Positions 1 to 47,817 of a stretch of 64,000 nucleotides of DNA are shown here, piece after piece (positions within the stretch are counted from its first letter, which is position 1; each line of letters begins with the position of its first letter). This DNA comes from Adineta vaga. Taxonomy: Eukaryota; Animalia; Rotifera. The position numbers were made by a program, and so were the translations under genes. The stretch lies in assembly GCA_021613535.1 (NCBI GenBank), contig CP075492.1, positions 13,764,001 to 13,828,000 on the forward strand, given 5' to 3'. Under the pieces are notes generated by a model. It saw only the letters and a program-made list of their open reading frames with translations. It was not told the DNA's origin and did not search any database.

Positions 1-784
1 AAGCATTCACGTAAAGATAAATACTGGTATGAATCGTTTAGGATTGGATATAGATGAAATTCCGGTGTTTCTGAATATTCTCTTCAAGTATACTAGGTGT
101 CGTCTGATGGTGAAATCGATTTATACCCATGTAGCAGCTAGTGATGATCCTCAGGAAGATCAATATACAGCCGACCAAACACGTGCCTATCTTTCCAGTG
201 TTCATATCTTGGAGACAGGTCTTGGTTATACAGTATTGAAACATATGTGTAATTCAATGGGTATTTTACGTCATCCAAATCTTCATTTTGATATGGTGCG
301 AGTAGGAGGTGGTTTATATGGTGCTGCTGAATGTTTCCTACCATATATGTCAACATTGTTACCTGCTATATCTATGATGAGTACTGTCACACAAGTACGT
401 CATGTTAAAAAAGATTCGACAATTGGTTATAACCGACGTGGACGAGTCAATCGTGATTCTTTTATTGGGATCCTTCGTCTTGGTTATGCCGATGGTTTAC
501 GACGACAACTAGGAAATGGACATGGACATGTATGGATACATGATTGTCGAGTGTCATTTATTGGTTCTATATGTATGGATTTTGCTATGATCGATCTGAC
601 CGATGTTCCAGTTGATAACAAGTATGAATTAGAAAATGAATCTGTCGAAATATTTGGTAGTCATAATAATATTGAAGAAATAGCTCGGTGTTCTGATACG
701 ATTGTGTTTGATTTTATTTCAACTATTGGTAAAAGAGTAAAGCGTGTGTATATCGAGGATGAAAAGAATAAAGAAGATTTTTAG
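1..784 (+). CDS. alr: Alanine racemase family PLP enzyme, 5'-truncated by the window edge; bacterial-type, intronless in the visible part
   Basis: Frame is open from base 2 (SIHVKINTGMNRLG). Motifs: YTH, CNS, DMVRxGxGLYG, TIGY (catalytic Tyr), GYADG, GSICMD, RVKRVY. The PLP-binding Lys lies upstream of the window. Confidence 0.9.
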   Translation, partial: SIHVKINTGMNRLGLDIDEIPVFLNILFKYTRCRLMVKSIYTHVAASDDPQEDQYTADQTRAYLSSVHILETGLGYTVLKHMCNSMGILRHPNLHFDMVRVGGGLYGAAECFLPYMSTLLPAISMMSTVTQVRHVKKDSTIGYNRRGRVNRDSFIGILRLGYADGLRRQLGNGHGHVWIHDCRVSFIGSICMDFAMIDLTDVPVDNKYELENESVEIFGSHNNIEEIARCSDTIVFDFISTIGKRVKRVYIEDEKNKEDF

Positions 785-907
785 TGCTTACAAAATAGAA
801 TTTTATGTTCCGTAACAGATTAAATTAGAATGTAGTATATTTATTTAAAAGCATTAAACGGCACAAATAAATATATGAACAAAAAAATGACAAATAAAAG
901 ATTCTAT

Positions 908-3201
908 TTAATTAATTATATTATAAACGCTGTCTTGTACTATTTTCTTTCCTTTGAACATATCTGTTAACCAATGACTATCGGCATTCTTTTCTTCTAT
1001 GTAAAGATCAAGTGCTTTTCGACATCTTCGACGAATATTGAAAAGATTCATTAAGTCTGTTGATGATAACAAATGTATTTCTTCACATGCTTGAAATACA
1101 TATTCGATAAAGCCATGTTGAATTCCAACTAAAATTGCTTCATTCTGTTCTGGATGAGCTGATATGCATAACAATTGCGCAGCAAATTGACGCACACATT
1201 CACTAATATTTTCAAGAGAAATACTTGCAATTTCGATAACACCATAAGTTGGTTGATTCGATGTTACTTCATACATACCAGCACAAATATCAGATTCGGG
1301 TAAGAAACCGTAAAGTGCTCGAAGACATCTGATCGCCATCATTCCGTAAGAACTAGCACATTTGGCTGGAAGTGACGAAATATATTCAAAAGGAATGGCT
1401 GATATTGATAGTAAAGATAAAATTGCATCAGTCTTTTCTTCAGATGATAATAGAACAAGTGAACTAATTGGTTCTAAATGAACATTCGAACATCGAGGTG
1501 CCGATGGACGAGTAAGAATTGAATTGAAATTAAGAGTTAAACTAGTATCTGGAAGTTTTATTTCAACATCTGTGAATGTTTCATAAGATTTAGTTCTTTC
1601 CATTGGTATTTCATATTGAGTTAAATGACGAATCCATGCTTGTAGAATGGAAACTTCTTGTGATGTAAATGCACCAAACATACGTCCACCCCATTTCATT
1701 TCACGAACAAGTTTACTTCGTTCCGGTTCACCACGAACAATCCATTGACTATCAGCAAGTGTACGTAGGAAGGTCAGCGAATGATTAGGATAAAGAAGTG
1801 GATCGAGCCAATCATTCAGTTTCATTCCTGTTCGACCTCCAATTTTTCCCAAACATGATGCATGAATTGAATGAGCTGCAATTGATTTTTCACCAAAGAT
1901 TTTTTCTAATGACTTGTCAAGATCAGAATACGGTATTGGTGTTGTAGGAAGTTCAGATGCGAGAAGAAATCCTGCTTGAATACGTTTCCAAGCCGTACTT
2001 TGTTCGACGACAGGCAACGATGTTATATAAGTAATAACAGAATTGACTCCCATAGCTGCATGTCCTGAATGTTTATTATCAATGGAAACATGTAGAACAA
2101 AATAATATGGATCAATGTTTAATTCACGCAGTTCATAGATTGTAATAAGAAGATGTAACGGTAAACTTTCATAGGACATATTAAAACCGAGAATTTCTGG
2201 TAGAAACATATCAGGAAAAAGAGAAATACACAATTGTGCAATAGCACCAGTCCATACACGCACATCGTTATTAGCATTTCGAAAGGATGAAATGAAGTCT
2301 TTTGAATCTCCACGACCAATATCATTTGCATCGATGGATTCTAAGAGTTGTCGATACACCCAAACATGATTTTTCTGTAAATCACCATCACCTAGTTCTT
2401 CACTTAGAATTTGCCATAAAGTTTTCGTAAATGAACGATACATCATATTCGTTGTAGTTCGATGTATACCACCGATCCAAGCACCATCTACATATTTGAC
2501 AGGTGCAACTGTACGAAGCCAATACTTGGCATAGGTTACATCAGGAAATAATTCACGGGAACCTCCATTTTGTCGACGTTCAAGATACTCTTTATAACCT
2601 ACAGTAACATCGAAGTATTCATCATCAAGAAATTTTGTGAGTGCTGCTGATGAGAACGTAGGTACAGCATTGAGTATATTTCGTGACGAAGATGTACGTG
2701 CTGAATCAATTGTGAAATCAAAAAGTGAAAGAAGTCGATTGTAAGCGACATGTAATGCTTCGGGATAATGTTCGAGATTTTGTAATTGATGATAGAGTTG
2801 TTTGTCGAGATCGAGTTGAGAAATCAATGCAGTTAGATCTTCTGTCTAAGAAAAAAAAAAGAATCGTCTTTTTTTTCATAAAACGCATTTCGTACTAAAT
2901 GACCCTTAAAATAAATATCATACACGTTGATTATCGCTATTACTTTCAATATGTTGAGATAAGAAGAATGTTTTTCTTTCGATTCATTTTTATTATCAAC
3001 AACAGATAAACGACGTGAGTATTTTTAAATGAAATTTTCATCAAGTTTATATTTATAAAAACGTACCTTGTTGAAAGTAAATTGATCTGTGATTGTTTTC
3101 TTTTTATTAAATCCGTTAAAAATATTTTTTTTAATTGAATGCACCATCCAATAATAGACGAAGAGTAGAAATGCAAAAAGAGAGGAGAAGACACTCAGCA
3201 T
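908..3201 (-). CDS. Heme-oxygenase-like diiron oxidase (iron-containing redox enzyme family), about 690 aa, with N-terminal hydrophobic anchor; exons 3201-3067 and 2845-908
   Basis: Metal-ligand motifs VDGAW, SEELGDG-x4-NH, GFNMSYE and YFVLHVSIDNKHSGH. A polyT-cttag acceptor at 2846 and an aag|gtacgt donor at 3066 join in phase 0 to a 45-codon exon MLSVFSSLFAFLLFVYYWMVHSIKK...FNK. Confidence 0.85.
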
Positions 3202-3653
3202 ATTAAAAAAAAAGAAACTTGAATATACACAACGTATTCATGCAAGACAGATAGTTATAGGTATGATTACGTCTTCTGTATATTTATACATACATTAATG
3301 TGACGCTCTCGCTTACATGCGCTGTACGCATGCTGTTTGCCCTCACTTCGGTACATTTTGCTGTACTTTGATATTACCTTTCCTTACCTTCTATTGACGG
3401 ATGAGTATATAAGCATGTGTTTTGTATCATATCGATGCGATTTATATGAGGAAGAAATAAATAAACGCGTAGTCCCATCAGCGTAAGCATCTCCTCCATC
3501 GAAAATCGTCACAATTATATTGCACGCAGGCTCCTCGATACTTATGTAATGTATGTTTTTAACTTAGAGTGCAATACGAAAAAAGTTATTGAGTACAAAA
3601 TAAAATTATTTTAGCATTCAAGTCTTCACAATTGGATATATCTCAGTGATACA
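3202..3653. promoter_or_regulatory. Probable bidirectional promoter between the HDO and methyltransferase genes
   Basis: 452 nt between two divergent ATGs, locally CpG-rich (3300-3355), with TATA-like tatataag near 3407. Inferred from geometry only. Confidence 0.5.
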
Positions 3654-4681
3654 ATGTCTCCAACAATGAACGACGATATCTTATTACAACTTGCACAAGC
3701 TATAAAGCAAACTGATTACCATTTTATTACAGTGACACCAGCAGTGAGTAAATTTTTTCTGTCCTTCAATCAGATGATATATACACGTGCTTTAATCTTA
3801 AGACGCATGCACGTGTCAATCGTCGTGCGGAGAATCGTTGGGCAAGAACGTTAAACGATGTGTTTGGATGGAGTCGACCATTTCATAGTGATCTATTCGT
3901 CGATAACAAAGATCTATTTGATCTTATGCATAGAGCACAAATACTTGTTGAAATAAAAGATAATAATGAAGAAAATTGGCGAAGTTCTATACGAATATCA
4001 AGTCTGGATAATGAATTATTTTTACATTCTGCTTATCCTACATCAGCTGCTGATTCTGTTTTCTTTGGACCGGACACATACCGATTTTCACGTGCTATTC
4101 GTGCAGTTATAGATGCACGTCCTTCGACGGCTCCTGCTGTACGTCGTGTCGTCGATATTGGTTGTGGAGCTGGACCAGGTGCTATTATGCTTGCTAAAAC
4201 TTATCCAAATGCGGAAATTTTAGGAGTTGATATTAATGATACTGCACTTCGTTTAACTTCAATCAATGCTCGTCTCGCAAATGTCAATGTCATTGCCTGT
4301 CATAGTGATCTTCTGAAAGATGTTCAAGGTGATTTCGATATGATTATATCAAATCCACCTTATCTAGTCGATTCTTCAATGAGACGATATCGACATGGTG
4401 GAGGTTCGCTTGGAGCAGAATTGTCTGTTGCCATTGTCAATTCAGCTTGCCAACGACTTACCAATGGTGGAACATTACTTCTTTACACTGGTTCGGCAAT
4501 TATGAATGGTCAAGATCTATTTTATGAGGAAGTTAAGAACAAATTAGATAATTCTGGCTTATGTTGGACCTATGAAGAAGTCGATCCTGATGTATTTGGT
4601 GAAGAATTAGAAACTGAAACTTATGTTCATGCAGATCGAATTGCTGCTGTTGTTCTTATTGCAACAAAAAACTCAGTTTGA
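3654..4681 (+). CDS. Class I SAM-dependent methyltransferase, HemK/PrmC-like NPPY type, 322 aa; exons 3654-3743 and 3803-4681
   Basis: A 59-nt phase-0 intron (gtgagt...taag) joins YHFITVTPA to THARVNRRAENRWARTLNDVFGWSRPF. Motifs VFFGPDTYRF, VDIGCGAG, DIN, NPPY, YRHGGG. Confidence 0.9.
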
Positions 4682-5003: not shown

Positions 5004-6110
5004 GAAATAAACTATACATTTTGAGAATATGCATGTTGAATATATTTAACATACTAAACAAAGTCAGATATTATCAATTTGACTATAGGTTTTAATTAAG
5101 AAGTCTTTTGCATTTATACTATCAAAAATGAATTGAATCATTTTAAAGTAAAGATAAACTTGTAACATGCATCGATGGGTAATGTTCTGGAGTATAGACT
5201 GAATTAGGAAACAACGAAATCAATTTTACGTAAACTTGTATTGCAAATGAAGAACATCAATATTTACCACAAATTATTATCGAAGTCATCGCTGATCGAA
5301 ATTCGAATCCAGAATTTGAAATTATGTTTGATTGTGATTATGGTCAATGCAACAGTGGCGTTAATTTCAACCACATCATGAGTCTAATCGATAAAATTAT
5401 TCCCAAAAACGAATCAGAAATAAACAGCACGATATCGACTAAAACAACTCAACCATCAATTTCAACAACTTTAAATCCAACGATCATCAGTAAGTATGTA
5501 ACATCAAAGAATAACAGATTGCACCAGACAAGTACTGCAAGCATGATGTGTATTATTCACAAATTTCGAAAAATATTCTAGTGATAATTGATCATCATAC
5601 TACTAATAATGAACGAACAAAGTTATGGAACTAGTGCAGCTAATTTCATTCCAATTAACTTAAATAAAGATGTATTGGATGTCACTTTCGACGACTGCAA
5701 TTTGACTTCATTTAATTTTGCTTCGTAAAGTGATGTATAACTATGCTGATTATTACCATATTTATGTGCTAAAAATGATTCAATTCCATGACAACTAGAA
5801 GAGAATTATATTGATTCATCAGTAATATGACTGATAACTTCTTGTGTATACGTTTCCCAGTCAAAACGATACAAGATAATAAAAAGAACAGTATTGATAA
5901 ATATTTCAACATAGTAGTCATACCAATCGAAAATCTAAAAATATTCGTATATAACTTGTTCAAATAAAGGCCATTATATAAGCACATAGGAAGGTCAATA
6001 TCACAAAATCTGATCAAACAAACAACTGATGTTCAATTTTTCATTCCAGTAGAACAGATAAATCACCCACACGCACCCAATCTCTTATTTCTTCGGGAAT
6101 AATGAGTAAT

Positions 6111-6741
6111 TGGTTTGGTATTGGTATCATTATTGGATATGACGTTGATTTTCATGTTTAAACAGCTACAGGACGATTATTAAGCGTTGGATTATACTTG
6201 TTGAATTTAATATTAGTAGCAACATATACTACTAATTTTTAGCATCGGATCTAACGATATCAAAGTCAAAACATATTACATCTGACATTGTTGATCTAAA
6301 GGGTGGAAAGATACCTTTCAGTCGTATTGGTGTTTGTGTGAATACAGCTGATGAAGAATATTTTCTTCAAGAAATATCAGATGGAAGTCGTATTTATTAT
6401 CCATTAAAATCTTTGCAATATATGATTGATGGTCTATTGAACGGTAATATTGATGCAACTTTCTTAGACAATGGTTCTGCTGAATATATAACGAATCATA
6501 TCGATTGTAATTTAACTTTAATTGGAGAAAGTTTTACTCCAGTTGTATTTGCTATTGTTGAATGAAAACAGTAGTTGTATGAACAAGACTTTGAAACAAA
6601 GAATTGTATTGAATCAACTAAAACAATATTTTCAATGGATATTGAATACATGGGTGGATTATTTCTTACATTTGGTGTCATTTGTGTTTTATCCGTATTG
6701 CTATTTATATAGATCAAATGGTCAAAGATAAGGAATTATTA
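6111..6741 (+). pseudogene. Decayed fragment (pore loop, M3, S2, M4) of an AvGluR-type glutamate receptor paralog
   Basis: WFGIGIIIGYDVDFHV*TATGRLLSVGLY...ATYTTN/LASDLT...EISDGSRIYYPLKS...CNLTLIGE aligns by eye to the 35333-38020 protein. Stops at 6159 and 6563, frameshift in the T-run near 6238. Confidence 0.85.
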
Positions 6742-30172: not shown

Positions 30173-32214
30173 ATGGACTACATTATCCACTCATAATGAT
30201 GACTACAATTTTGAAATTTATTCTCTCTTTTGGCTTGATGCTGAAGTGAATATCTCATCCGAAAATATTGATGCGCAGAACCGAATCCGTGCATTTATCA
30301 ATCATTTGAAAACGTTTGAAGATGCTGAAGAATGCAAGCATCAGATACAATCTCTCTCTAGTCATGATCGACTTATTCTCATTGTTAGTGGCAGATTGGG
30401 AAATGAAGTAGTTTCGTGTATTCATCAACTTCGTCAAGTCTGTTCAATTTATGTTTATTGCTTAAATAAGAAAAAACATTAAACATGGACCAACGAATTC
30501 TCAAAGGCATGAACAAATTTCAGTATGTCTCATGCATATCATATTAATGTTTTAGGTTAAAGGTGTGATTGTGACCTTAGACGATTTAGTTGAGCAAATT
30601 CGATCACAATATATCAAAGAACAGCAAAGTAAAGTTGATGAGCCTATTCTCATTAGTATTTTCAAAACTAACCTTGGATATGAACGGTCAACAACAGGAC
30701 TGAATGGTCAGTTTATCCATTTGCAGTTACTTATTGACTGCTTTATTCGTATACAACCAACTAAAAATGATATGAATGAATTGCTCTCTTTTTGTCGAGA
30801 ATATTACAAAGATAATAAGATACAGTTAAGTATACTAAATGAATTTGACGAGACATATTCTCCTGATCAATCACTATCGTGGTACACAAGAGATTCATTT
30901 CTCTATCGTTTGCTAAACAAATCGCTACGCACACAAAATGTTGATCAACTCTTTCTTTTTCGTTTTGTGATTTGCGATCTTCAACAACAGCTTCAGAAGT
31001 ATCGATGTACTTCTTCTATGCGTCTTTATCGTGGTCAACTGATGTCAAAAGAGGAATTTCAAGTACTGCAAGATTCAGTTGGAGAATTTATTTCAATGAA
31101 TTCATTTCTATCGACTACTCTCAATCGTCAAGTTGCTCGTTCCTTTCTAGGTGATTCCAATGATCTTGAACGGGTACTGTTCGAGATAAACACTGATCCT
31201 CGTCTCGATAACATCAAACCATTCGCGAATATTACTTTGCTCAGTAATTTCGCAAACGAAGAAGAAGTATTAATGATGTTGGGATCGATCTTTCGATTGA
31301 TTAGTATATTTTGTGATAACGATGGTATATGGATTATTCGTATGGAACTTTCCAGTGATGACGATCACAGCTTTAAGCCTATTTTTGATTATATGAAAAA
31401 TGATTATGGTGGAGGTGATGCGAAGACAAATATTTTACGTTTTTGCATTGTTCTGATGGAAATGGGCAAGTTGGACGAAGCTGAACATTATTTCCATCGT
31501 TTATTAGAAGAATTATCTAACGAGCATAAAGATGTACGTCGTTGTCATTATTTACTTGGTATTTTATACACAAAAAAAGGTAACTACGATACAAGCCTAG
31601 ATTGGCACTACAAAGCTCTAGAAAAGAAAACGAAACATGGAAAAAATAACGATCTTGATCTTGCACATAGCTACAATTGTATTGGGAACATTCGTCGTAA
31701 GCAAGGTAATTATGACGAAGCACTCAAAATGTTTCACACTGCGTTAACTATATACAATCGAGTATTGGGCGAAGAGCATGTGGATGTAACTAAATGTCTC
31801 GCTAATATTGGAAATGTCTATCAGCGAAAAGACGACTATCGAAAAGCATTGAAGTATCATCTAGAGACATTATCAATTCGTCAGAAATACCTTCCTGCTG
31901 ATCATCCTCATCTAGGAGCATCACATTATAATGTTGCTACGGCATATCGTTATCTTGGGAAGTCTGAACTTGCTCTAGAACATGCAAATATATCGCTAAA
32001 GATCTCGCGAAAATCGCTTCCTCCTAATCATCCAAACATTGCTTGGGCGATTGAAAATATAGGTTATGTCTGTGAAGATATGGGCCAATTAGATGAAGCG
32101 TTATCGCATCTGAAAAAAGCAGCTGCTCTCTATCGTGAAACATTACCCTTGACACATCCTTACATAGCTGACGTTGAGAGAAATATTCAACGTATTTCTT
32201 CTCAGTTACATTGA
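30173..32214 (+). pseudogene. ART-TPR gene 1: N-terminal alpha/beta domain disrupted, ADP-ribosyltransferase plus TPR ORF (30556-32214) intact
   Basis: LYRGQ, FLSTT and NEEEVL motifs followed by about 6 TPRs. The ATG at 30173 is out of frame with the following domain, there is an in-frame TAA at 30480, and the intron donor at 30507 is GC. Confidence 0.75.
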
Positions 32215-35332: not shown

Positions 35333-38020
35333 ATGAGAATATTTCGAGAAAACATCTCATGGTTATTATTATATGTTCTCCATAATTTAAAAAGCGTTAT
35401 GGCGATTTGGCCAACGCCTAGCAATTCTAGTCTTCAATTGCTAGGTTTTTTTCCAAATGCAGAAAATACATCTCAAACGAAGGAATTGTCTATTCATACT
35501 CAAGCAATGTTCAAAGCAGCTGTTTTACTTTCACATCAATATAATATTACTGTCGAAGGACAATATATTCAATGGCAAGCAAGTTTTACTGATGGAAATG
35601 TGATGAATACTCTTGGTAATACATGTCGAGCGATCTCCTCTTCGAATATCGTAGGTATTATCGGTCCGATATTCTCAAGAGAAGCTCATCAAATTGCAGA
35701 TTTTGCCAACAAAATTGGTATTCCAGTGGTATCATCTACGGCTACCGATTCTGATCTATCGAATCGAGAGAATTATCATGCATTTTATCGTACAGTACCA
35801 TCAGATAGTACGATAGCATTAGCACTTGCGAAATTATTCATTCGATATAATTGGACATCGTGCATTATTATCTATCAAAGTGATGTATATGGTACTGGCG
35901 GTACAAAAGTTATTAGTGAAACATTTCTTAAATATAATATAGAAGTAACAGATTTAATTGTTTTTGACATGGTCATGAATTCAATTCGAGGTAATTTAAG
36001 AACTTATTTAACAACTAGTATATCGCGTATTGTCATTTTATGGACGGATATTGTTTATATATCACAAATTCTTCGATATGCACTTGATGCCGATATTCTT
36101 GGTCCACATTTCACTTGGATATTAACTTCAAGTATATCATTGGATTCTTTTGATCAAATTTATCATTCAAAATTAATTGGAATACTTACTATTGAACCTG
36201 TCACAGGTACTGTTGTTGATGCACCTATTAATTCAACATTATTACATGCTGCTTATCAACTTTGGCAACAATATGAGCCCGAATCATTTCCTACATCAGC
36301 AAAAGTAAATTCTTACGCATTATTTGCTTTCGATGCAACATGGACATTAATTCAGTCATTACAGAAATTTTGTTCTTCACTGAAAGATAATTCGTCATCA
36401 TGTTCAGCATATGATGGACCTTTATTTTGTTTTGATCGTCATTTTATCCATTCGAATTTATTATTCAACATTATGAATTCACTTAGTTTTCTTGGTGTTT
36501 CCGGTCATGTTCAATTCACTATGAATGTGACGGATCGGGTCAATGGTTCGTATTATTATGCTCAAAATATTCAATATACATCCAATCATATTAGTTTCAC
36601 TCCAGTTTTGAAATATGATTCATCCGATGATTGGCAAACATATTCGAGAACAAATGTTATTATTTGGCCAGGAAATTCATTAACTCCTCCAATAGATCGA
36701 GCTAGACTTAAAGGTATTACTTTACGTATTGGTGTTATTGAATCAGTTCCATTTACAATAGTTGCAAATGTAATAGATACGTCGGGAAGAAATACTACGA
36801 AATTAACCGGTTATGTACTAGATTTAATTGAATATTTACGTGATAAAATGGGATTTGTTGCTGATGTTCAATTAGCACCACCTAATACAAGTTATACAGG
36901 TTTAGTTCTCGCAGTAGCTAATGGTGATTATGATATTGCTATAGGTGATATAACAGTAACGAGTGCACGACGAGAAATAGTCGCATTCTCTAATTCTATC
37001 TCAGATAATTCTATGCGAATACTGATGCGGAAGACGCCTGCTATTCAAGTTGATCTTTTATCTTATTTAAAACCATTTTCACGAAATTTATGGTTATTAT
37101 TATTAGGTGCAACCATTTTCGCTAGTATTATTCTTTGTGTAATCGAACGACCTGATAATGCAGCATTACAAAATCGTTCAATAATATCATCAGGTGCGAT
37201 GATTTTATGGTTTTCATTTGGTACAATTGTTGGATATGGGGCCGATTTTCATGCTCAAACAGCTGCCGGACGTTTAGTTAGCGCAGGATTGTATATATTA
37301 AGTTTGGTCCTAGTTGCATCTTATACTGCTAATTTAGCATCGGAATTAACTATATTGAAAACGAAAGATTTAATTGATGGAATGGATGATTTAAAAAATG
37401 GAAAGATTCCATATAATCGTATTGGTATTCGTATTGGAACAGCAGGTGAAGATTACTATTTAAGAGAAATATCTGGAGGTAGTCGAAATTTTTATCCATT
37501 AAAATCTCGACAAGAAATGTATGATAGTTTACTTGCTGGAATTATTGATGTATCATTTATGGATATTGGCACTGCTGAATATGTCACGAATAATATCTAT
37601 TGTAATTTAACATTAGTTGGAGAAGATTTTGATAAAAGTACATTCGGTATTGTTACACCTAAAGAATGGTTATATGCAAAAGATTTAGATGTAAATATTT
37701 TATCATTGAGAGAAACTGGTATTCTTGATAATTTAAAGAAGAAATGGTTTCAGACAAAGGCTTGTCCGCAAACTAGCGAAATATCAACAGCATTAGGACT
37801 TGAATCTTTAAGTGGATTATTTCTTACCTTTGGTGTTATATGTGTTTTATCTATTGGTCTATATGCATGGAATAAGCGAAATATGATTCGAAAATATGTA
37901 AATATCTTACGACATCAAAAGACAATATCACTAAGAAGTGAAACGTATATGGTAGATTTTACTAATAAGCCACATACTTCTACGACATCTTCGTCTACTA
38001 TATCACAAATCATTGCATAA
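35333..38020 (+). CDS. AvGluR1: Ionotropic glutamate receptor with K+-channel-type selectivity filter (AvGluR1 or a very close allele/paralog), intronless
   Basis: Signal peptide, LIVBP-like ATD, S1 (GDITVTSARRE), M1, pore WFSFGTIVGYG, SYTANLA, S2, M4. The S1/S2 sequence matches the AvGluR1 ligand-binding domain as I recall it. Confidence 0.9.
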   Translation: MRIFRENISWLLLYVLHNLKSVMAIWPTPSNSSLQLLGFFPNAENTSQTKELSIHTQAMFKAAVLLSHQYNITVEGQYIQWQASFTDGNVMNTLGNTCRAISSSNIVGIIGPIFSREAHQIADFANKIGIPVVSSTATDSDLSNRENYHAFYRTVPSDSTIALALAKLFIRYNWTSCIIIYQSDVYGTGGTKVISETFLKYNIEVTDLIVFDMVMNSIRGNLRTYLTTSISRIVILWTDIVYISQILRYALDADILGPHFTWILTSSISLDSFDQIYHSKLIGILTIEPVTGTVVDAPINSTLLHAAYQLWQQYEPESFPTSAKVNSYALFAFDATWTLIQSLQKFCSSLKDNSSSCSAYDGPLFCFDRHFIHSNLLFNIMNSLSFLGVSGHVQFTMNVTDRVNGSYYYAQNIQYTSNHISFTPVLKYDSSDDWQTYSRTNVIIWPGNSLTPPIDRARLKGITLRIGVIESVPFTIVANVIDTSGRNTTKLTGYVLDLIEYLRDKMGFVADVQLAPPNTSYTGLVLAVANGDYDIAIGDITVTSARREIVAFSNSISDNSMRILMRKTPAIQVDLLSYLKPFSRNLWLLLLGATIFASIILCVIERPDNAALQNRSIISSGAMILWFSFGTIVGYGADFHAQTAAGRLVSAGLYILSLVLVASYTANLASELTILKTKDLIDGMDDLKNGKIPYNRIGIRIGTAGEDYYLREISGGSRNFYPLKSRQEMYDSLLAGIIDVSFMDIGTAEYVTNNIYCNLTLVGEDFDKSTFGIVTPKEWLYAKDLDVNILSLRETGILDNLKKKWFQTKACPQTSEISTALGLESLSGLFLTFGVICVLSIGLYAWNKRNMIRKYVNILRHQKTISLRSETYMVDFTNKPHTSTTSSSTISQIIA

Positions 38021-38197: not shown

Positions 38198-41100
38198 TCA
38201 CTGTAGGCTACGTATTGAGTCTACTAAAGCTTGATTTTCTTTCACCTCTGCATGATCGGCACCATAACCTAGGCGAGCACTATTAACAGATTTTTCTGCG
38301 TGTCTAAGAGCTGCTGTATAGTCTTTGAGTTTTCTATAAATCATTGCCGTATTATAATACGTAGTAGCCATTGATTGATGGTCAGGAGAGGGCAATGTCT
38401 CTTGAATTTTAAGCGCTTTTTCGTAGAATTCAACGGCAGCAGAGTCATCTCCCATTGCTGAATGTATTGCTGCAATCCCACTATAAAGTGGCGCTAATAA
38501 TGGATCATTAGATGGTAACTTCTTCATTCTAATATCGAGTGCCTTTTGATAAAATATCAAAGCATTTTGCTTATCATCAACAATTTTATAAGCAATAGCG
38601 ATATTGTTGTAAATAGTGGCTAGCTGAAGTTCATCTCTAGAGGGAGATTTTTCATGAATTTCAGCTGCTTTTATATAATACGATAGCGCATTGGTGTAAT
38701 CTTTCATATCAAAATATACTGAAGCAATGCTATTACAAGTTGTGGCAAGTGTTAAGTCATCAGATGCCAGCCTTTCCGCTCGAATAGTCAATGCTTTTTG
38801 ATAGTATTCGAGAGCCTTTGATTTATTGTTCATACTGAGATGAACAATACCTAGGTTGTTATAGTTGGTGGCCAATTCTAGATTATCAGCGGACGGAGAC
38901 TGTTCACGAATAGCAAGTGCTTTCGTATAATGAGAGAGTGCTTTCTCGTGATTTTTCATTGAGTAATATATTGACGCAATACTACTGTGGCTTGCAGCAA
39001 TTATCATATCATTATTGGAAAGAGCTCTTTCCCGAATAGCTAGTGCCTTCTCGTGATATCGAAGAGCATTTGATTTATCATCCATCGAATTGTAAGCGAC
39101 TGCAATGTTATTATAGTTAGTGGCTAAATCAAGATCGTCTTTTGTCAAAGATTTTTCTTCTCGGATTGCAATTGCTTTACTGTAAAATACAGTTGAGTTT
39201 GAATAATCCTTCATGCTAAAATACACCGAAGCAATGCTGGTATAAGTCGATGCTAACAGGAGACTATCAGGAGTCAATTTTTTCTTACGGATAGCACATG
39301 CTTTCTCGTAATACTCTAATGCTTTTGGATAATTCTCCATTGAATCGTATACTATTCCGATATTACTGTAAGAAGTAGCTATATCTCGATGATCTTCTGG
39401 GAGTGTTTTTTGTTCAATCTCCAGAGTTTTTTCATAATATGATAGTGCCTTTTGGTACTCCTTCATTGCATTATAAGTTAAGCCAAGGTTACTATAAGTA
39501 ATCGTTAAATTACGATGTTTAGACGTAGAAGATTTCGTTTGTATTTCCAATGCTTGTTCGAAAAATGAGAGAGCCTCTGCATACTTTTTCATTGCATGAT
39601 TTACTGATCCAAGTTTGTTTAAAGTCGTAGCCATCTGATTTGATTCATTAAGTTGTGGATTTTGTTTGCAGATTTCATAAGCTTTCTGATGCATAGATAG
39701 CGCTGTTGCATACTCTCGCATGGATTGATAAACTGAACCGATGTTGTTGTATGAAATAACAATTGATGGATGATTCGAAGGCAAGGTAGCTTGCTCAATT
39801 TCAAGCGATTTCTGATAATTTGATAATGCAGCTGATTTATCGCCCATCGAATAATAGGCCACTCCGAAATTATTATAGGTGCTAGCTAAACTTTGATGGT
39901 TCTCAGATAAAGCTTGCTTTTGAATTTCAAGTGCTTTTTCGAAGCAGGAGAGTGCTTGAGGATATTTCTCCATTGAATTATGTATTGAGCCAATACAATT
40001 AAAAATAGTAGCGTTATTAGGATGATTAGCAGGCAGAGATATTCTTTGAATTTCTTGTGCTTTTTCATAGTATTCTAGCGCCGTCAAATGATCACCCATT
40101 GAACAATGAACAGAACCAAAATTAGCGTAACTTGATGCTAAATCTGGATGTTTTGGAGGAAGTGATTTTATACGAATGTCAAGTGCCTTTTGTGAGTAAT
40201 CGAGCGCCTTGGGATAATTGACCATATCGCAATATAATCCGCTAATGTTACAATATATAATTCCAAAATCAGGATGATTCGATGGCATCGTTTTCTGACG
40301 AATATTGAGCGCTTTCTCATAAAATGAAAGCGCTTTGTCGAATTCTGCTAATGTTTTATATATTAAACCGATATTACCATAAGTTGTAGCAAGTGCAAGA
40401 TCATCTGAAGGAAGCGACTTCTTCTGTATGTCCAGTGCTTTTTCATATGTTGAAAGTGCACATGTATAATCACCTAATGATTCATATACTCCAGCAATAT
40501 TGTTATATGTCGTAGCAAGTGATGGATCATCAGGTTCCACAAATTCCATTTCGGCTTTAAGCGATTTTTCATAATATTCTAGTGCAGTCTTGTATTCACC
40601 TTTCTCATTGAAGACATAGGCAAGTTGATGATTGAGATGAAACTGTCTACGTTTGTTCGTTTCATCAGTACTTTGCAATTGTGTGCCGTATATGTTATGA
40701 GCTTGATCGAATTCGCCCATTTTAATCATAAGATGACCAAGTTTGCTCAGGGGAGAACCTTCACCGAGTTCTTTTCGCATATAATCAGCAAGAAGTTTTA
40801 GTTGTGGATCATTATCACTTGTGAGAGCTAAGTTCACTTGCCAGAGTCGATTGGCTAGTTGTTCTGTACCCAAGATTCGAAAAACTGTATGCATCGAAAA
40901 AAGATTTTCTTTTTCACCTTTATGACACGTTTCTGTTTCTACTTCGGCAAAAGGAACTGATGATACCATTGGATTAATTTCCATTTGAAAGATAATTGCC
41001 ATGACTTTTGAATTTTTCAATTCTTTTCTTGCGAAATACTTGGCAACATTTTCATCGGTAGTCGTCGATAAGAAATTATTGAACGAGAGAAGACCACCTT

Positions 41101-42178
41101 GACTTTCTTTAATCTTTTCCAAATCCTCCGGTATCATTCCTTGTCCACGATAAACGACGAATTTATCATTATCACGTATTTTCGACTGTGCTTTGTAGAA
41201 TTCTACGATTTGCTGATGAAGATCCTGTACAAAGAATCCCATTTTCATGATTGTTTCGACGTCTTGGACTCTTAAGGCTCGGTTCAACGACACATACAGA
41301 AAGGATTCTTTTGTATACCATTTTATTGCTAAGAGATTCGTATATTCTACAGCAAATTCATCAATCAGACCTAACTGCAGAATATTATCTGCATATTTAG
41401 GTCGACAATATTCAATTAGTTTAATTTTTGTCTCGGAATCGTGTTTCATTTCTATAAGAATTTCTTTCAGTAATTGAGTATACATAAATGATTGATCTAA
41501 TTCATTTGATATTGAGCTTGGCACATCCATTCGACGTATAATACTGATCGGTGTCAAACTTCCAACGAGCCCACTATCAGCTTTGATCTTTTGAAAGATG
41601 TCTTCCATGCTGAATAAGATTTCTTTTACTTTTTGTGACCATTTATTAGCCCAGGGCAAACGTTGTCGTTTCACTTGGCTAAAAATATAAATAGCTTCGA
41701 GCTGAGATTTCTCATGAACAAGCGGTACAAGTTCTTCGCCCAGACCATCTGACACAATAAGATAGACATTTTTATCATCAATATTATCGAGATAATTTAC
41801 ACATTCTGTAGACTTCGTGCATGTATAAATCGCTGGAGTAATTCGTTGAAGTTTTGTTATTGAATCATGATACAATTTCTTTGTTTGATCAATATTTGCA
41901 TCTGCCCATATAATGACGATATTTTGATTGACATCGCTAGTCGAATGTATTGATGGATTCTTAACATTGTTTTCAGATATTGTTGGCCTGTAAACATGAT
42001 CATTTAGGTGAGATTCAATACTTGTTACACTTTTTCTCGTATTTTTCTTTGATGAAGCACTAGATATACGCTGTATTGATTTATCTACTAGTGTAGTTTG
42101 TTGATTACTAGAACTTATGATTTCGGGTTTTGTTGTAGGAGGAATAACGTGAACGGTCGAACTATTTCCACAACCCAT
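38198..42178 (-). CDS. ART-TPR gene 2: N-acylation motif, alpha/beta domain, ADP-ribosyltransferase, about 20 TPRs of 42 aa; intronless and intact
   Basis: Starts MGCGNSS. ART motifs VYRGQ, FLSTT and GEKEN. Repeats of LATxYNNIxxxYxxMxDYxxALxYYEKALxI. Confidence 0.9.
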   Translation of the reverse strand: MGCGNSSTVHVIPPTTKPEIISSSNQQTTLVDKSIQRISSASSKKNTRKSVTSIESHLNDHVYRPTISENNVKNPSIHSTSDVNQNIVIIWADANIDQTKKLYHDSITKLQRITPAIYTCTKSTECVNYLDNIDDKNVYLIVSDGLGEELVPLVHEKSQLEAIYIFSQVKRQRLPWANKWSQKVKEILFSMEDIFQKIKADSGLVGSLTPISIIRRMDVPSSISNELDQSFMYTQLLKEILIEMKHDSETKIKLIEYCRPKYADNILQLGLIDEFAVEYTNLLAIKWYTKESFLYVSLNRALRVQDVETIMKMGFFVQDLHQQIVEFYKAQSKIRDNDKFVVYRGQGMIPEDLEKIKESQGGLLSFNNFLSTTTDENVAKYFARKELKNSKVMAIIFQMEINPMVSSVPFAEVETETCHKGEKENLFSMHTVFRILGTEQLANRLWQVNLALTSDNDPQLKLLADYMRKELGEGSPLSKLGHLMIKMGEFDQAHNIYGTQLQSTDETNKRRQFHLNHQLAYVFNEKGEYKTALEYYEKSLKAEMEFVEPDDPSLATTYNNIAGVYESLGDYTCALSTYEKALDIQKKSLPSDDLALATTYGNIGLIYKTLAEFDKALSFYEKALNIRQKTMPSNHPDFGIIYCNISGLYCDMVNYPKALDYSQKALDIRIKSLPPKHPDLASSYANFGSVHCSMGDHLTALEYYEKAQEIQRISLPANHPNNATIFNCIGSIHNSMEKYPQALSCFEKALEIQKQALSENHQSLASTYNNFGVAYYSMGDKSAALSNYQKSLEIEQATLPSNHPSIVISYNNIGSVYQSMREYATALSMHQKAYEICKQNPQLNESNQMATTLNKLGSVNHAMKKYAEALSFFEQALEIQTKSSTSKHRNLTITYSNLGLTYNAMKEYQKALSYYEKTLEIEQKTLPEDHRDIATSYSNIGIVYDSMENYPKALEYYEKACAIRKKKLTPDSLLLASTYTSIASVYFSMKDYSNSTVFYSKAIAIREEKSLTKDDLDLATNYNNIAVAYNSMDDKSNALRYHEKALAIRERALSNNDMIIAASHSSIASIYYSMKNHEKALSHYTKALAIREQSPSADNLELATNYNNLGIVHLSMNNKSKALEYYQKALTIRAERLASDDLTLATTCNSIASVYFDMKDYTNALSYYIKAAEIHEKSPSRDELQLATIYNNIAIAYKIVDDKQNALIFYQKALDIRMKKLPSNDPLLAPLYSGIAAIHSAMGDDSAAVEFYEKALKIQETLPSPDHQSMATTYYNTAMIYRKLKDYTAALRHAEKSVNSARLGYGADHAEVKENQALVDSIRSLQ

Positions 42179-44593: not shown

Positions 44594-47500
44594 TTAGTTT
44601 TTATGAAAAAAGATAAGTACGATGACAAAAAGAAAGAAAAACATTAATCGACATAGAGATGATGATTTATCACACGAGTATTCATCACATGAAACGTTCT
44701 CGATAGAATTACCGATATCTTGTAAAGACTTTTCAATGCGTCTTAGATCTTTCTCAGCATTAAGTATTTGAAATAAGTCCAATGCTTTTCTATAATAATT
44801 CTCTGAAAGTGCTCTGTCTCCAAAATGATAATAATAGATATTCCCAAATATTTCATTATTTTTTGCAATTAAATCATACTGATTATCATAATGTGTTTCG
44901 ATGATTTCCATTGATTTCTTGCAGTAATTCATACCGGCCTCATAACGATCCAACTTGCAATAAATTTCACTTATTTGACTGTAAAATTTCCCCATTTTAA
45001 TAGGATCATTCTGTTTCAGATTTTCAACTATATCAATCATGTATTCATAGATTTTTATTGCTGATAAACAATCATTCTGTTGACAATAGAATGACGATAA
45101 TTGCTGGTAGAGATTGAAGAGTGTATCATAATTTACACTCTGAACATTCTTATAGATATTTATCGCATATTCTAAGTGTTGAATGGATTGATTGGGTTTA
45201 TTCGCCTGTTGATAATATGATGCTAATCGTACATGCAGATCACTGGATGTTAATTCACAATTAGAATCCATGATTTCATGAATGTTTAAAGCGTTTCTTA
45301 AATTTTCAATAGCCAAGTCATATTCATTGATTCCTACGTATACTTTCCCAATGATCTTGTATATTCGAATGGTTTCAACATCGTTGACATTATATTTTTC
45401 TCGAATGGAGAGAGATAAATGATAATAATCTAGAGAAAAAGGATAGTTTTTTTCCTTCTCATAACTAGATCCAAAGAGAACATATATATCAGCTAAAGAT
45501 ATTTCATTCAAAGCCGATGGAAGAATTTCTTTCTGTATTTCCACAGCATGTTGATAATTTTCTCTATTGCTAATTCATATTCTTGCTTTTCATCATAACA
45601 AGTACCAATTCGTTTGTAGAGTTGAATAATTTCTATTTTATTAGCTACTATTTTCTTTCTCAAGTCTAAAGCCATTTGATAATGAAGAATAGTTAAATCA
45701 TAAATTTTCTCACTCCAAAAACATAAGGCAATCTTTTCATGAACTTCAGCAAGTTTCATTTCATCGCAAGGTAAGATCTTTTCTTCAATTTCTAATACCT
45801 TTTCGAAATGTAATCTCGATATATCAAATTGTTTCATAAGACCATAACAACGAGCAATATTCAAGTAAATCATTCTTTTCATTTCTAAAGAATCATTCAT
45901 CGATTTCATGTAATATTCTATAGCTAAATCATATTGATGATTTTCTTCATAAAAATCAGCAAGTTCATTGTAAGTTAAGGGAAAAATCGGATGATTATCA
46001 GGAAAAACTGCTTTGCGAATTGATAGAGCTCTTTGACCATAGTCAATGGCATTCTCATAATCGTCCATAAGATAGTAACCTTTGGCGATAATTATATATG
46101 CATCTGATTTGGATACCGGATCGAATAATCGATCAGAATCATTGAAAATTTGGAGTCATTTTTGCGAATGTTCGAGACCATCAGTCAAATTATTAGATGA
46201 AAAATAAATTATTGCCATATTTGTATGAATTTCTAACATGAGATCAGGATTATCGTTAATACTATCTTCAGTTATACTTCGTTCATAACATTGTAATGCT
46301 AAATCATATTCTTCTCTATAACTATAAATTCTTCCTAGAAGTAATTCAATATCTTTCATATCATTCGGAAGAATAAATCTATTGATTTGATATGCTGCAA
46401 GTGCATATTGTAATGCAAGATCTTGTTGTTTATTTAACATATGACAACGAGCTAATCCTTTCAGTACAAAATATCGTTCATATTCATATAATCTTGTTCG
46501 ATTTCTTAGATTCTTCAAAAATACAATACTCTTCTCATATTGTCCCATTTGCATCAAATACATTCCAAACGTAAGAATACTTTGGAAATTACTATTCGAA
46601 TCAATGATACGTTGTTCTAATAATTCTCGTTCTCTATCGATATAGATATTTTGTATACAATCAATATCTGCTACAGCTATCATCGATACAATCCATTGAT
46701 TTCCATCGGAATTAATATCAGTAATTTTAAATGTTACACCTAAATCAAATAGAACTTCTTGTTCATCTGGTATTTGACTAAGATGAGATATGTTTGCGTA
46801 AATCAAATTTTTACTTGATTGTTTTGGATCAACAGGAATTTCAAATAAAACATTACTAGCAAACATTTCTGCTACAGTTCGAGATAGACTTGTAGAAAGA
46901 AAGCCATTGGTTGAAACATATTGATTCCTCATTGTTTTCAATCGATCGATATCTTCGTCAGATAAAGTTAAACCACGATAGACTTTCAAGTATGGAATGT
47001 GTGTACGATGCATATCTAAACGATTCTTATTGTAGAGTTCTTGTAATTGTTTCGAAAGACAAATAATAAAAGAACGTAAATTGTAGAGAGCATCAATATC
47101 TTCAGATCGTAAAGCTTTATTGATAAAATTAAATGGAAAATAATTATTTGTGTACCAACGAATAGCTTCGAATAAATTGTATGTTTGTTCGAATTGATCA
47201 ATTTGTCGAAGACTTATACGATCATTTGCATAATAAAAACGACAATATTCTAACATTTCTTTTTTCGATGTTTCAGGTTCGATAGAGATCAATGAATCAT
47301 GTAATAATTGATACCAAGCATAGTATGCTGATTCATGTTCCAGATTACGCATAGATCTATTTGATTGTTCAATAATTTTAAAGATCGACAGATGTTTTAA
47401 TAATGAACGCATACGTTTTTCAATGAATTGAAACAATGATTTGTATTCTGTATAAATACCTATTAATTTAATATTGGTTCTATCATCGAAATGATGTTGA

Positions 47501-47817
47501 TACAATTGTCTCTCGATACAAAATATGAAGATGGAATCAATTTGATTGTTATGCTGAAAATTTGTTACGATTTCTTGTGAATAGCGACCAGCGATGATTA
47601 AAATGATTTTATAATCTGTTAAATCATTGATAAGATCAGTGAGTTGTTGAATAGTTGAACAAGTGTCTGTATGTGTATGTAATTCTTTCAATATTTGATG
47701 AATTTCAGGTTCGATAGAATCGTCCAACCAGATGATGAATAGTTCGTCATTTTTATTTAATACAAAAGTATTTATTAATAAGGTGATATCAGATGTATGT
47801 AGAACTCTTTTTGACAT
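44594..47817 (-). pseudogene. ART-TPR gene 3 with C-terminal hydrophobic tail; in-frame TGA at 46158-46156 and frameshift near 45560
   Basis: IIWLDD N-domain and VYRGL, FLSTS, DEQEVL motifs. TPRs continue in frame past the TGA, shift frame in an A-run, and end LMFFFLFVIVLIFFHKN. Confidence 0.8.

What the first reader, a model, noticed from the sequence alone, without database searches (positions are those of the whole stretch)
1..4681. Candidate horizontally acquired mini biosynthetic cluster in an animal: racemase + diiron HDO oxidase + NPPY methyltransferase
Seen: three enzyme genes of non-metazoan type within 4.7 kb. The HDO and methyltransferase are head-to-head 452 nt apart, the racemase is tail-to-tail with the HDO (123 nt gap), and all three frames are intact in a window full of pseudogenes. 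Established: HDO enzymes (SznF, BesC, UndA, FlcE/FlcD, RohS) oxidise amino acids or fatty acids, giving N-oxygenated, desaturated or C-C-cleaved products. NPPY methyltransferases act on amide or amine nitrogen. Bdelloids carry many foreign genes, including alr. Recalled but unverified: this HDO subfamily and the VFFGPDTY methyltransferase are neighbours in proteobacterial and fungal genomes, with no product I can name. Inference: a retained two- or three-gene pathway making an oxidised, methylated, possibly D-amino-acid-derived defence metabolite.
Basis: partly seen in the sequence, partly recalled or inferred. Interest (0 to 1): 0.9.

Follow-up and report, generated by a model that had tools for sequence, protein, structure and literature searches.

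The report
Mosaic borrowed-enzyme cluster in rotifers
A tiny freshwater animal keeps, side by side and transcribed, an iron oxidase borrowed from fungi and a methyl-adding enzyme borrowed from bacteria, the same two kinds of gene that sit together in bacteria and in many fungi, which points to an unknown small-molecule pathway that the animal may have put together itself.

Summary
The window is Adineta vaga. In detail: three intact genes (Alr, a PF14518 diiron HDO, an NPPY methyltransferase) with 123- and 452-nt gaps. RNA contigs confirm the introns, and all are under purifying selection. The HDO–methyltransferase head-to-head pair recurs in A. ricciae, A. steineri and three metagenomic bdelloid contigs. 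The same two families are adjacent in 71 of 80 bacterial loci and head-to-head in Dothideomycete fungi. A D-Ala-ligase variant just upstream of the window forms an Alr–Ddl module that stays next to the pair in three lineages, in three different arrangements. The pair does not look co-transferred. The HDO is fungal-type (membrane anchor, groups with Pezizomycetes, whose HDO loci lack the methyltransferase), while the methyltransferase is bacterial-type. Best model: a cluster assembled in bdelloids that N-oxygenates and methylates an amino-acid scaffold, possibly ligated to a D-amino acid. Substrate, product, co-regulation and a defence role are not shown. The proteins have been in GenBank since about 2008 (HDO misnamed 'ATPase-like'). 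I found no paper on the pathway. This scan noted the same locus from the neighbouring window, but not on other DNA.

The parts
2..784 (+). Alanine racemase (Alr), last exon; first exon and the head-to-head Ddl gene lie just before the window (L091 5871-6293 and 4601-5698, window offset -6347)
   Evidence: PF01168/PF00842, TIGR00492 above cut-off, best model Bacteroidota-type PRK11930; covered by RNA-type contigs; full gene in L091
908..2845 (-). HDO exon 2, 645 codons plus stop: heme-oxygenase-like diiron domain (ligands E150, H160, E226, H252, D256, H262 in exon-2 numbering) and a C-terminal helical domain
   Evidence: PF14518; ligands conserved in 89-90 of 90 homologues; model pLDDT 94.8, best folds RohS Z 18.9, SznF 16.5, HrmI 16.1
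2846..3066 (-). HDO intron, 221 nt, GT-AG, phase 0
   Evidence: sequence; skipped in RNA-type contig X1, not in X12
3067..3201 (-). HDO exon 1, 45 codons: hydrophobic N-terminal segment followed by lysines (probable signal anchor)
   Evidence: hydropathy 1.94; similar leader in five other bdelloid loci and in 96 of 120 homologues, mostly fungal
3202..3653 (.). 452-nt head-to-head spacer holding both 5' UTRs; probable bidirectional promoter
   Evidence: RNA-type contigs reach 3529 from the HDO side and 3487 from the methyltransferase side; contigs cannot fix start sites
3551..3614 (+). 5'-UTR intron of the methyltransferase, 64 nt, GT-AG
   Evidence: skipped in runs X1 and X6
3654..3743 (+). 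Methyltransferase coding exon 1, 30 codons
   Evidence: intron position after the TPA motif shared with the other bdelloid loci
3744..3802 (+). Methyltransferase intron, 59 nt, GT-AG, phase 0
   Evidence: skipped in runs X1, X5, X6
3803..4681 (+). Methyltransferase exon 2: class I SAM fold with DxGxGxG, NPPY and FFGPDTY motifs
   Evidence: PF05175; nearest solved folds GenN and AerE N-methyltransferases, TM 0.6-0.7; 58-62% identical to bacterial proteins

Best explanation
A small-molecule pathway cluster put together in the bdelloid lineage from genes of at least two donors. The core is a divergently transcribed pair: a membrane-anchored, O2-activating diiron HDO of fungal type and a SAM-dependent NPPY methyltransferase of bacterial type. 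They most likely act in turn on one amino-acid-derived scaffold, the HDO oxidising an amine or guanidine nitrogen and the methyltransferase methylating a nitrogen (or the new N-OH), as SznE/SznF do. In A. vaga, A. ricciae and one more lineage a second divergent pair, Alr plus a Ddl with an altered substrate pocket, sits next to it and probably supplies a D-amino acid and ligates it to the scaffold, taking the place of the amide ligases (YbdK, cyanophycin synthetase) found beside some bacterial copies. Shown: gene structure, splicing, selection, ligands, folds, linkage, discordant placement. Inferred: shared pathway of the pair (about 0.7), N-oxygenation as the chemistry (about 0.45), Alr-Ddl in the same pathway (about 0.45), separate donors (about 0.65). 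Role is open: stress protection about 0.35, defence about 0.35, other about 0.3.
For: Pair adjacent in 71/80 bacterial methyltransferase loci, with two distinct HDO subfamilies filling the slot (45 long, 26 short). Head-to-head in Ascochyta and 13 fungal-type metagenome loci and consecutive locus tags in five more Dothideomycetes. Head-to-head in six bdelloid loci with different flanking genes. Alr-Ddl adjacent in three permuted arrangements. dN/dS about 0.09-0.23 for all four genes. Diiron ligand set matches the SznF pattern. Top folds are N-oxygenases and small-molecule or peptide N-methyltransferases. HDO placement inside bacteria rejected (delta lnL 260 or more), best with Pezizomycetes; methyltransferase placement inside the fungal clade rejected (delta lnL 244 or more), best among Proteobacteria. 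Seven HDO loci nearest the rotifer one or named Pezizomycete/Daldinia lack an adjacent methyltransferase.
Against: No enzyme of either subfamily is characterised; no PDB sequence match for the HDO and fold identity is only 13-17%. Many fungal and bacterial HDO loci have no methyltransferase (only 11/39 bacterial HDO loci carry one), so the HDO can work alone. One bdelloid contig (L088) has the methyltransferase without the HDO. Alr-Ddl is not within the available flanks in A. steineri, L002 or L089. A sister relation of rotifer and fungal methyltransferases was not rejected in free-tree AU tests (p 0.72, 0.74) and was borderline on one fixed backbone (p 0.06) though rejected on another (p 0.002). 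No Pezizomycete methyltransferase was sampled. Co-regulation was not measured.
Confidence: 0.5

Rival explanations
1. Single co-transfer of the head-to-head pair from an unsampled fungus whose methyltransferase was still bacterial-like; the pair works as in fungi, and Alr-Ddl is a separate bacterial acquisition.
For: Same head-to-head layout as Dothideomycete fungi; fungal-type HDO with membrane anchor; rotifer-plus-fungal methyltransferase monophyly not rejected; fewer events needed.
Against: Rotifer methyltransferase is 56% identical to bacterial and 35% to fungal ones, no closer to fungi than bacteria are (36%); 34 columns side with bacteria against 1 with fungi. It lacks the long fungal stem that the HDO shares. 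The nearest fungal HDO loci have no methyltransferase beside them.
Confidence: 0.25
2. Only HDO plus methyltransferase form a unit, serving a general stress or dormancy function (desiccation, oxidative stress, nitrogen storage) as their bacterial context suggests; Alr-Ddl makes D-Ala or a D-Ala dipeptide on its own and is a neighbour through local synteny.
For: A homologue is named after PA2179, and PA2178-PA2181 are co-induced within the PA2134-PA2192 trehalose/glycogen stress locus (PMC3224232). Bacterial neighbours include cyanophycin synthetase/cyanophycinase, YbdK ligase and Zn-dehydrogenase, not export or resistance genes. Three of six bdelloid loci lack Alr-Ddl. TRPM or ART-TPR genes near two loci hint at regional synteny.
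Against: The two modules stay adjacent through a transposition and an inversion while immediate flanks change. The Ddl pocket is altered the same way in all three lineages.
Confidence: 0.35
3. The methyltransferase modifies a protein or peptide amide (HemK/AerE-like), perhaps the HDO itself or a D-residue-containing peptide, and no free small molecule is made.
For: NPPY motif and weak HemK/PrmC profile hits; AerE, which methylates peptide Asn amides, is among the two nearest folds.
Against: Scores are far below HemK/PrmC cut-offs (70-76 bits against 115-199); GenN, a small-molecule N-methyltransferase, scores equally; no conserved precursor peptide emerged from neighbour clustering (ORFs of 110 aa or more only, so short peptides were not tested).
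Confidence: 0.15
4. Chance clustering of unrelated foreign genes in an HGT-rich region.
For: Bdelloid genomes hold 8-12% foreign genes (PMC8885841).
Against: The same two families are neighbours in bacteria and fungi, and the pair is kept head-to-head in six bdelloid loci whose synonymous sites are near saturation.
Confidence: 0.05

Closest known systems
SznE/SznF (streptozotocin): arginine N-methyltransferase plus HDO N-hydroxylase
   Same: Methyltransferase and HDO acting on one amino acid (PMC11705231); same six-ligand pattern; SznF fold match Z 16.5.
   Different: No cupin domain; 15% identity; last His spaced +6 rather than +3; membrane anchor and extra C-terminal helical domain; I did not test whether the methyltransferase is related to SznE.
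RohS, HrmI/BelK HDO N-oxygenases (amine to nitro or hydroxylamine)
   Same: Best structural matches, Z 18.9 and 16.1; same Pfam family PF14518 naming ('iron-containing redox enzyme').
   Different: 13% identity, no sequence-level match; substrate unknown; other HDO chemistries (FlcD, BesC, UndA, CADD) score Z 10-13 and are not excluded.
Bacterial 'iron-containing redox enzyme' plus class I methyltransferase operon (PA2179-type), uncharacterised
   Same: Same two families adjacent; methyltransferase 52-62% identical.
   Different: Co-directional operon; soluble 300- or 470-aa HDO only 30-40% identical; partners are YbdK or cyanophycin genes, never Alr/Ddl in the 80 loci.
Dothideomycete head-to-head HDO/methyltransferase pair, uncharacterised
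   Same: Divergent layout, anchored long HDO.
   Different: Methyltransferase only 28-35% identical and on a long separate branch; the rotifer HDO is closer to Pezizomycetes than to this clade.
AerE (aeronamide) and GenN (gentamicin) N-methyltransferases
   Same: Nearest solved folds, E about 2e-15, TM 0.62-0.72.
   Different: 18-20% identity; no RiPP precursor or aminoglycoside context.
Bacterial Alr/Ddl of peptidoglycan synthesis; A. vaga Alr HGT
   Same: Alr keeps the catalytic Lys and Tyr motifs; Alr transfer in A. vaga is reported (PMC5169069 citing Flot 2013).
   Different: No peptidoglycan in the host; Ddl has Gly for the conserved His of the HG motif and Phe/Leu for the omega-loop Tyr in all three lineages; linkage to HDO and methyltransferase not found described.
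Bdelloid NRPS/PKS clusters induced by a fungal pathogen (Nowell et al. 2024, PMC11258130)
   Same: Horizontally acquired biosynthetic genes in Adineta.
   Different: No NRPS/PKS here; these genes are not mentioned in text or held supplements; locus is mid-chromosome, not subtelomeric.

Membership tests
HDO superfamily (heme-oxygenase-like diiron) | PF14518 match above cut-off | tested here: met
   104 bits against 28.9
HDO superfamily (heme-oxygenase-like diiron) | Heme-oxygenase-like helical bundle | tested here: met
   predicted model, Z 18.9/16.5/16.1 to RohS, SznF, HrmI
HDO superfamily (heme-oxygenase-like diiron) | Three His plus three carboxylate ligands in E-x-H...E...H-x3-D-x-H order | tested here: met
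   E150, H160, E226, H252, D256, H262 conserved in 89-90/90; SznF set; assignment is by spacing and conservation, not by superposition
HDO superfamily (heme-oxygenase-like diiron) | Diiron cofactor assembly and O2 activation | not testable with these tools
   needs protein chemistry
HDO N-oxygenases (SznF, RohS, HrmI) | Sequence orthology to a characterised N-oxygenase | tested here: not met
   no PDB sequence match at E<=1; 13-17% structural identity; it may work like one but is not a member by sequence
HemK/PrmC release-factor glutamine methyltransferase | Score above TIGR03534/TIGR00536 cut-off | tested here: not met
   75.8 vs 199.1 and 69.9 vs 115.5 bits
Class I SAM NPPY N-methyltransferases | DxGxGxG, acidic residue at strand 2, NPPY, Rossmann-like fold | tested here: met
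Alanine racemase (fold type III) | TIGR00492 above cut-off; catalytic Lys and Tyr | tested here: met
   180.8 vs 168 bits on the partial protein; motifs; Tyr354-equivalent is Phe in Adineta, Tyr in L090
D-Ala-D-Ala ligase (canonical specificity) | His63 and omega-loop Tyr216 equivalents; score above family cut-off | tested here: not met
   His to Gly and Tyr to Phe/Leu in three lineages; 197 vs 246 bits on TIGR01205 with an in-frame intron included; ATP-grasp catalytic motifs kept
Biosynthetic gene cluster | Conserved physical linkage across genomes | tested here: met
   pair in six bdelloid loci; four genes in three
Biosynthetic gene cluster | Co-regulation | tested here: inconclusive
   all three window genes present in one RNA-type run, but contigs give no levels; Nowell 2024 supplements gave no hit
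Biosynthetic gene cluster | A shared product | not testable with these tools
   needs reconstitution and LC-MS
Cluster transferred in one piece | Congruent gene trees and same donor | tested here: not met
   HDO with Pezizomycetes, methyltransferase among bacteria; deep sister relation to fungal methyltransferases not excluded

The most novel reading that the evidence does not exclude
Bdelloid rotifers rebuilt, from a fungal oxidase and a bacterial methyltransferase acquired separately, the same gene pair that bacteria and Dothideomycete fungi keep together, then added a repurposed bacterial racemase-ligase module, giving an animal a four-enzyme cluster that makes an N-oxygenated, methylated D-amino-acid dipeptide not known from any microbe.
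Probability: 0.22. Interest if true: 0.88.

Novelty: new variant of a known kind. Interest (0 to 1): 0.62.

Why it matters
Metabolic gene clusters are rare in animals, and a cluster assembled from genes of different kingdoms would show selection for linkage acting after transfer. The locus also points to a widespread, uncharacterised HDO-methyltransferase pair (at least 576 bacterial methyltransferase loci, P. aeruginosa PA2179-type, many ascomycetes), so solving its chemistry would assign function to hundreds of genes and might add a reaction to the HDO family. It gives a testable purpose for the long-unexplained Alr and Ddl of an animal without peptidoglycan. It corrects a propagated annotation: fungal homologues are named 'ATPase-like' after this A. 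vaga protein.

Tried and rejected
Contamination: rejected (spliced introns, host-like GC3, chromosome position, orthologues). HDO leader as a rotifer invention: rejected, fungal homologues have it. HemK/PrmC identity: rejected by cut-offs. GenBank 718-aa HDO model with 28 extra residues: not supported by the RNA joint. Alr/Ddl as microbial neighbours of the pair: none in 80 bacterial loci. First genome scan with the single protein found nothing; all-against-all script timed out. The AU result (p 0.007) came from searches cut off by the time limit and is not used; only its identity and column counts are. The careful methyltransferase tree did not finish, so supports are SH-aLRT only. The 2008 Science paper and PMC4858778 were not held. 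Ten literature searches found no description of the pair or cluster; PMC6916707 (Alternaria cluster) is unrelated and PMC3499245 does not mention these genes.
Full report
Identity and gene structure. The HDO and methyltransferase match Adineta vaga proteins at 99-100% (B3G436/ACD54584 'ATPase-like', B3G454/ACD54602 'HemK family-like'), and the window is identical to chromosome CP075492.1 near 13.76 Mb of 20.35 Mb over the 14,681 nt that overlap. The three frames are stop-free, with gaps of 123 and 452 nt. Pfam gives Alr N and C domains, PF14518 and PF05175. RNA-type contigs skip the HDO intron 2846-3066, the methyltransferase intron 3744-3802 and a 5'-UTR intron 3551-3614, all GT-AG; the DNA-type run does not. 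The HDO is thus 690 aa, not the 718 aa in GenBank. Contigs from the two genes overlap at 3487-3529, which fits a shared promoter, but contigs cannot show start sites or levels. Spliced models were searched exon by exon; the joined step was left out.

The cluster is larger than the finding. L091 shows UGT(+), Ddl(-), Alr(+), HDO(-), methyltransferase(+): two head-to-head pairs joined tail to tail. Earlier scan notes s1-489731 and s1-490126 pointed to this and I confirmed both.

Conservation in bdelloids. The HDO and methyltransferase are head-to-head in A. ricciae (L001), A. steineri (L004) and three contigs of one ENA metagenome (L002, L089 at 46% GC; L090 at 38% GC), 62-71% identical, with the methyltransferase intron at the same position and a hydrophobic HDO leader exon. 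I take the metagenome contigs for bdelloid from these introns and the trees; L002 and L089 are probably close relatives. Alr-Ddl is adjacent in three lineages in three orders: Ddl-Alr-HDO-MT (A. vaga), HDO-MT-Ddl-Alr (A. ricciae), HDO-MT-Alr-Ddl (L090), with different immediate flanks. It is absent from the available flanks of L004, L002 and L089. L088 carries the same methyltransferase as L089 without the HDO. Rough NG86 dN/dS against A. vaga is 0.09-0.23 for all four genes, with dS near saturation; allele differences in the HDO and methyltransferase are mostly synonymous (17 against 5), less so in Alr (5 against 7) (partial list).

The pair in microbes. Of the 80 bacterial loci closest to the rotifer methyltransferase, 71 have a PF14518 gene directly adjacent: 45 a 470-aa type, mostly upstream in an operon, and 26 a 300-aa type, mostly downstream (an annotated example). 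Two different HDO subfamilies in the same slot argue for a functional tie. Other neighbours are cyanophycin synthetase (8), YbdK-type ligase (7) and Zn-dehydrogenase (23); none had Alr or Ddl. From the HDO side the tie is looser: 11 of 39 bacterial loci had the methyltransferase and 14 had cyanophycin synthetase. In fungi the pair is head-to-head in Ascochyta and 13 metagenome loci, and locus tags are consecutive in five more Dothideomycetes. It is absent beside the HDO in Maublancomyces, Tricharina, Tirmania, Daldinia and the three best metagenome matches. A homologue carries the name PA2179, and PA2178-PA2181 are co-induced inside the P. aeruginosa PA2134-PA2192 trehalose/glycogen stress locus (PMC3224232). 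That PA2180 is the HDO is my recollection, not checked.

Origins disagree. The HDO is 45-51% identical over its length to Pezizomycete proteins and 30-40% over about half its length to bacterial ones; it shares the fungal anchor and C-terminal domain and groups with Pezizomycetes (SH-aLRT 94). Moving the rotifer clade into bacteria costs 260 or more log units, and sister to bacteria has p-AU 0.01. The methyltransferase is 56% identical to bacterial and 35% to fungal members; all listed Atlas clusters are bacterial; placement inside the fungal clade costs 244 or more log units. What is not settled is where the long fungal branch attaches: rotifer-plus-fungi as sisters was not rejected (p 0.72, 0.74) or 88 (p 0.06), and was rejected in 93 (p 0.002). 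My fungal methyltransferases include no Pezizomycete. So separate donors are favoured (about 0.65) but a fungal donor with a bacterial-like methyltransferase remains possible. Alr scores best against the Bacteroidota-type MurF-Alr model.

Likely chemistry. The HDO model is confident (pLDDT 94.8) and matches RohS, SznF and HrmI best, all N-oxygenases, ahead of FlcD, CADD, BesC and UndA; identities are 13-17%, so this ranks folds, not reactions. Six candidate ligands are conserved in 89-90 of 90 homologues and follow the SznF pattern. The hydrophobic leader followed by lysines suggests a P450-like anchor with the enzyme in the cytosol (inference). The methyltransferase is nearest to GenN and AerE and below HemK cut-offs. 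SznE/SznF is the precedent for this enzyme pairing on one amino acid. Alr keeps its catalytic Lys and Tyr; the Tyr354 equivalent, which from my knowledge tunes specificity, is Phe in Adineta. Ddl keeps the ATP-grasp motifs but has Gly for His63 and Phe or Leu for Tyr216 in all three lineages; from my knowledge Tyr216Phe shifts DdlB towards D-lactate, so the product is unlikely to be plain D-Ala-D-Ala. I therefore favour an oxidised, methylated amino acid, in some lineages ligated to a D-amino acid. No substrate or product is shown.

Role. Defence is plausible given PMC11258130, but these genes are not mentioned there, no exporter is part of the conserved unit, and the bacterial context is stress and nitrogen storage. 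I rate defence and stress protection equally.

Novelty and verdict. The single genes are old records (GenBank ACD545xx/546xx; the 2008 date and source paper are from my knowledge, the paper was not held), and Alr transfer is published. Ten searches of the open literature found no account of the HDO-methyltransferase pair, of the four-gene linkage or of the split origin; subscription journals are mostly not covered. New variant of a known kind; interest 0.62.

Noticed in passing
P0141 (UniRef100_A0A914YX34, Panagrolaimus superbus): A nematode methyltransferase of this family nests inside the rotifer clade (SH-aLRT 99). Either animal-to-animal transfer between desiccation-tolerant animals, a shared donor with AT-bias attraction, or contamination; no contig on record.
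   Followed up: partly
L088 9704-15757 versus L089: Two contigs 99.8% identical from just upstream of the methyltransferase onward; L088 has other genes in place of the HDO. A rearranged haplotype or a chimeric contig.
   Followed up: partly
L147, L151, L152, L155, L158, L161, L162 and others; L020, L033, L034, L073, L083: Bacterial long-type HDO directly beside cyanophycin synthetase, with or without the methyltransferase and cyanophycinase; suggests Arg or beta-Asp-Arg as a candidate substrate.
   Followed up: partly
P0031 (A. steineri, 678 aa): Gene model joining the C-terminal half of this HDO to NHL repeats; probably a mis-joined model or a broken copy.
   Followed up: no
L002 7347-9252: HDO split into two frames, against an intact copy in L089; sequencing error or a broken allele.
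   Followed up: no
L091 2697-4228; L090 5481-6995; L001 13082-14389: Lineage-specific enzyme neighbours: UDP-glycosyltransferase in A. vaga, P450 in L090, amidinotransferase/arginine-deiminase-like gene in A. ricciae; possible tailoring genes, not conserved.
   Followed up: no
window 5950-6740: Fragmented ionotropic glutamate receptor-like sequence with in-frame stops (read by eye); an intact GluR-type ORF lies at 35333-38020.
   Followed up: no
window 30565-32214, 38198-42178, 46156-47817: TPR-repeat genes, two with ADP-ribosyltransferase domain hits; already noted as s1-498864.
   Followed up: no
P0024-P0029 names: The 'ATPase-like protein' misannotation of the A. vaga HDO has spread to Pezizomycete homologues.
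   Followed up: yes
P0452-P0493 (860-1030 aa): Longer eukaryote-type homologues of the HDO with unexamined extra domains.
   Followed up: no
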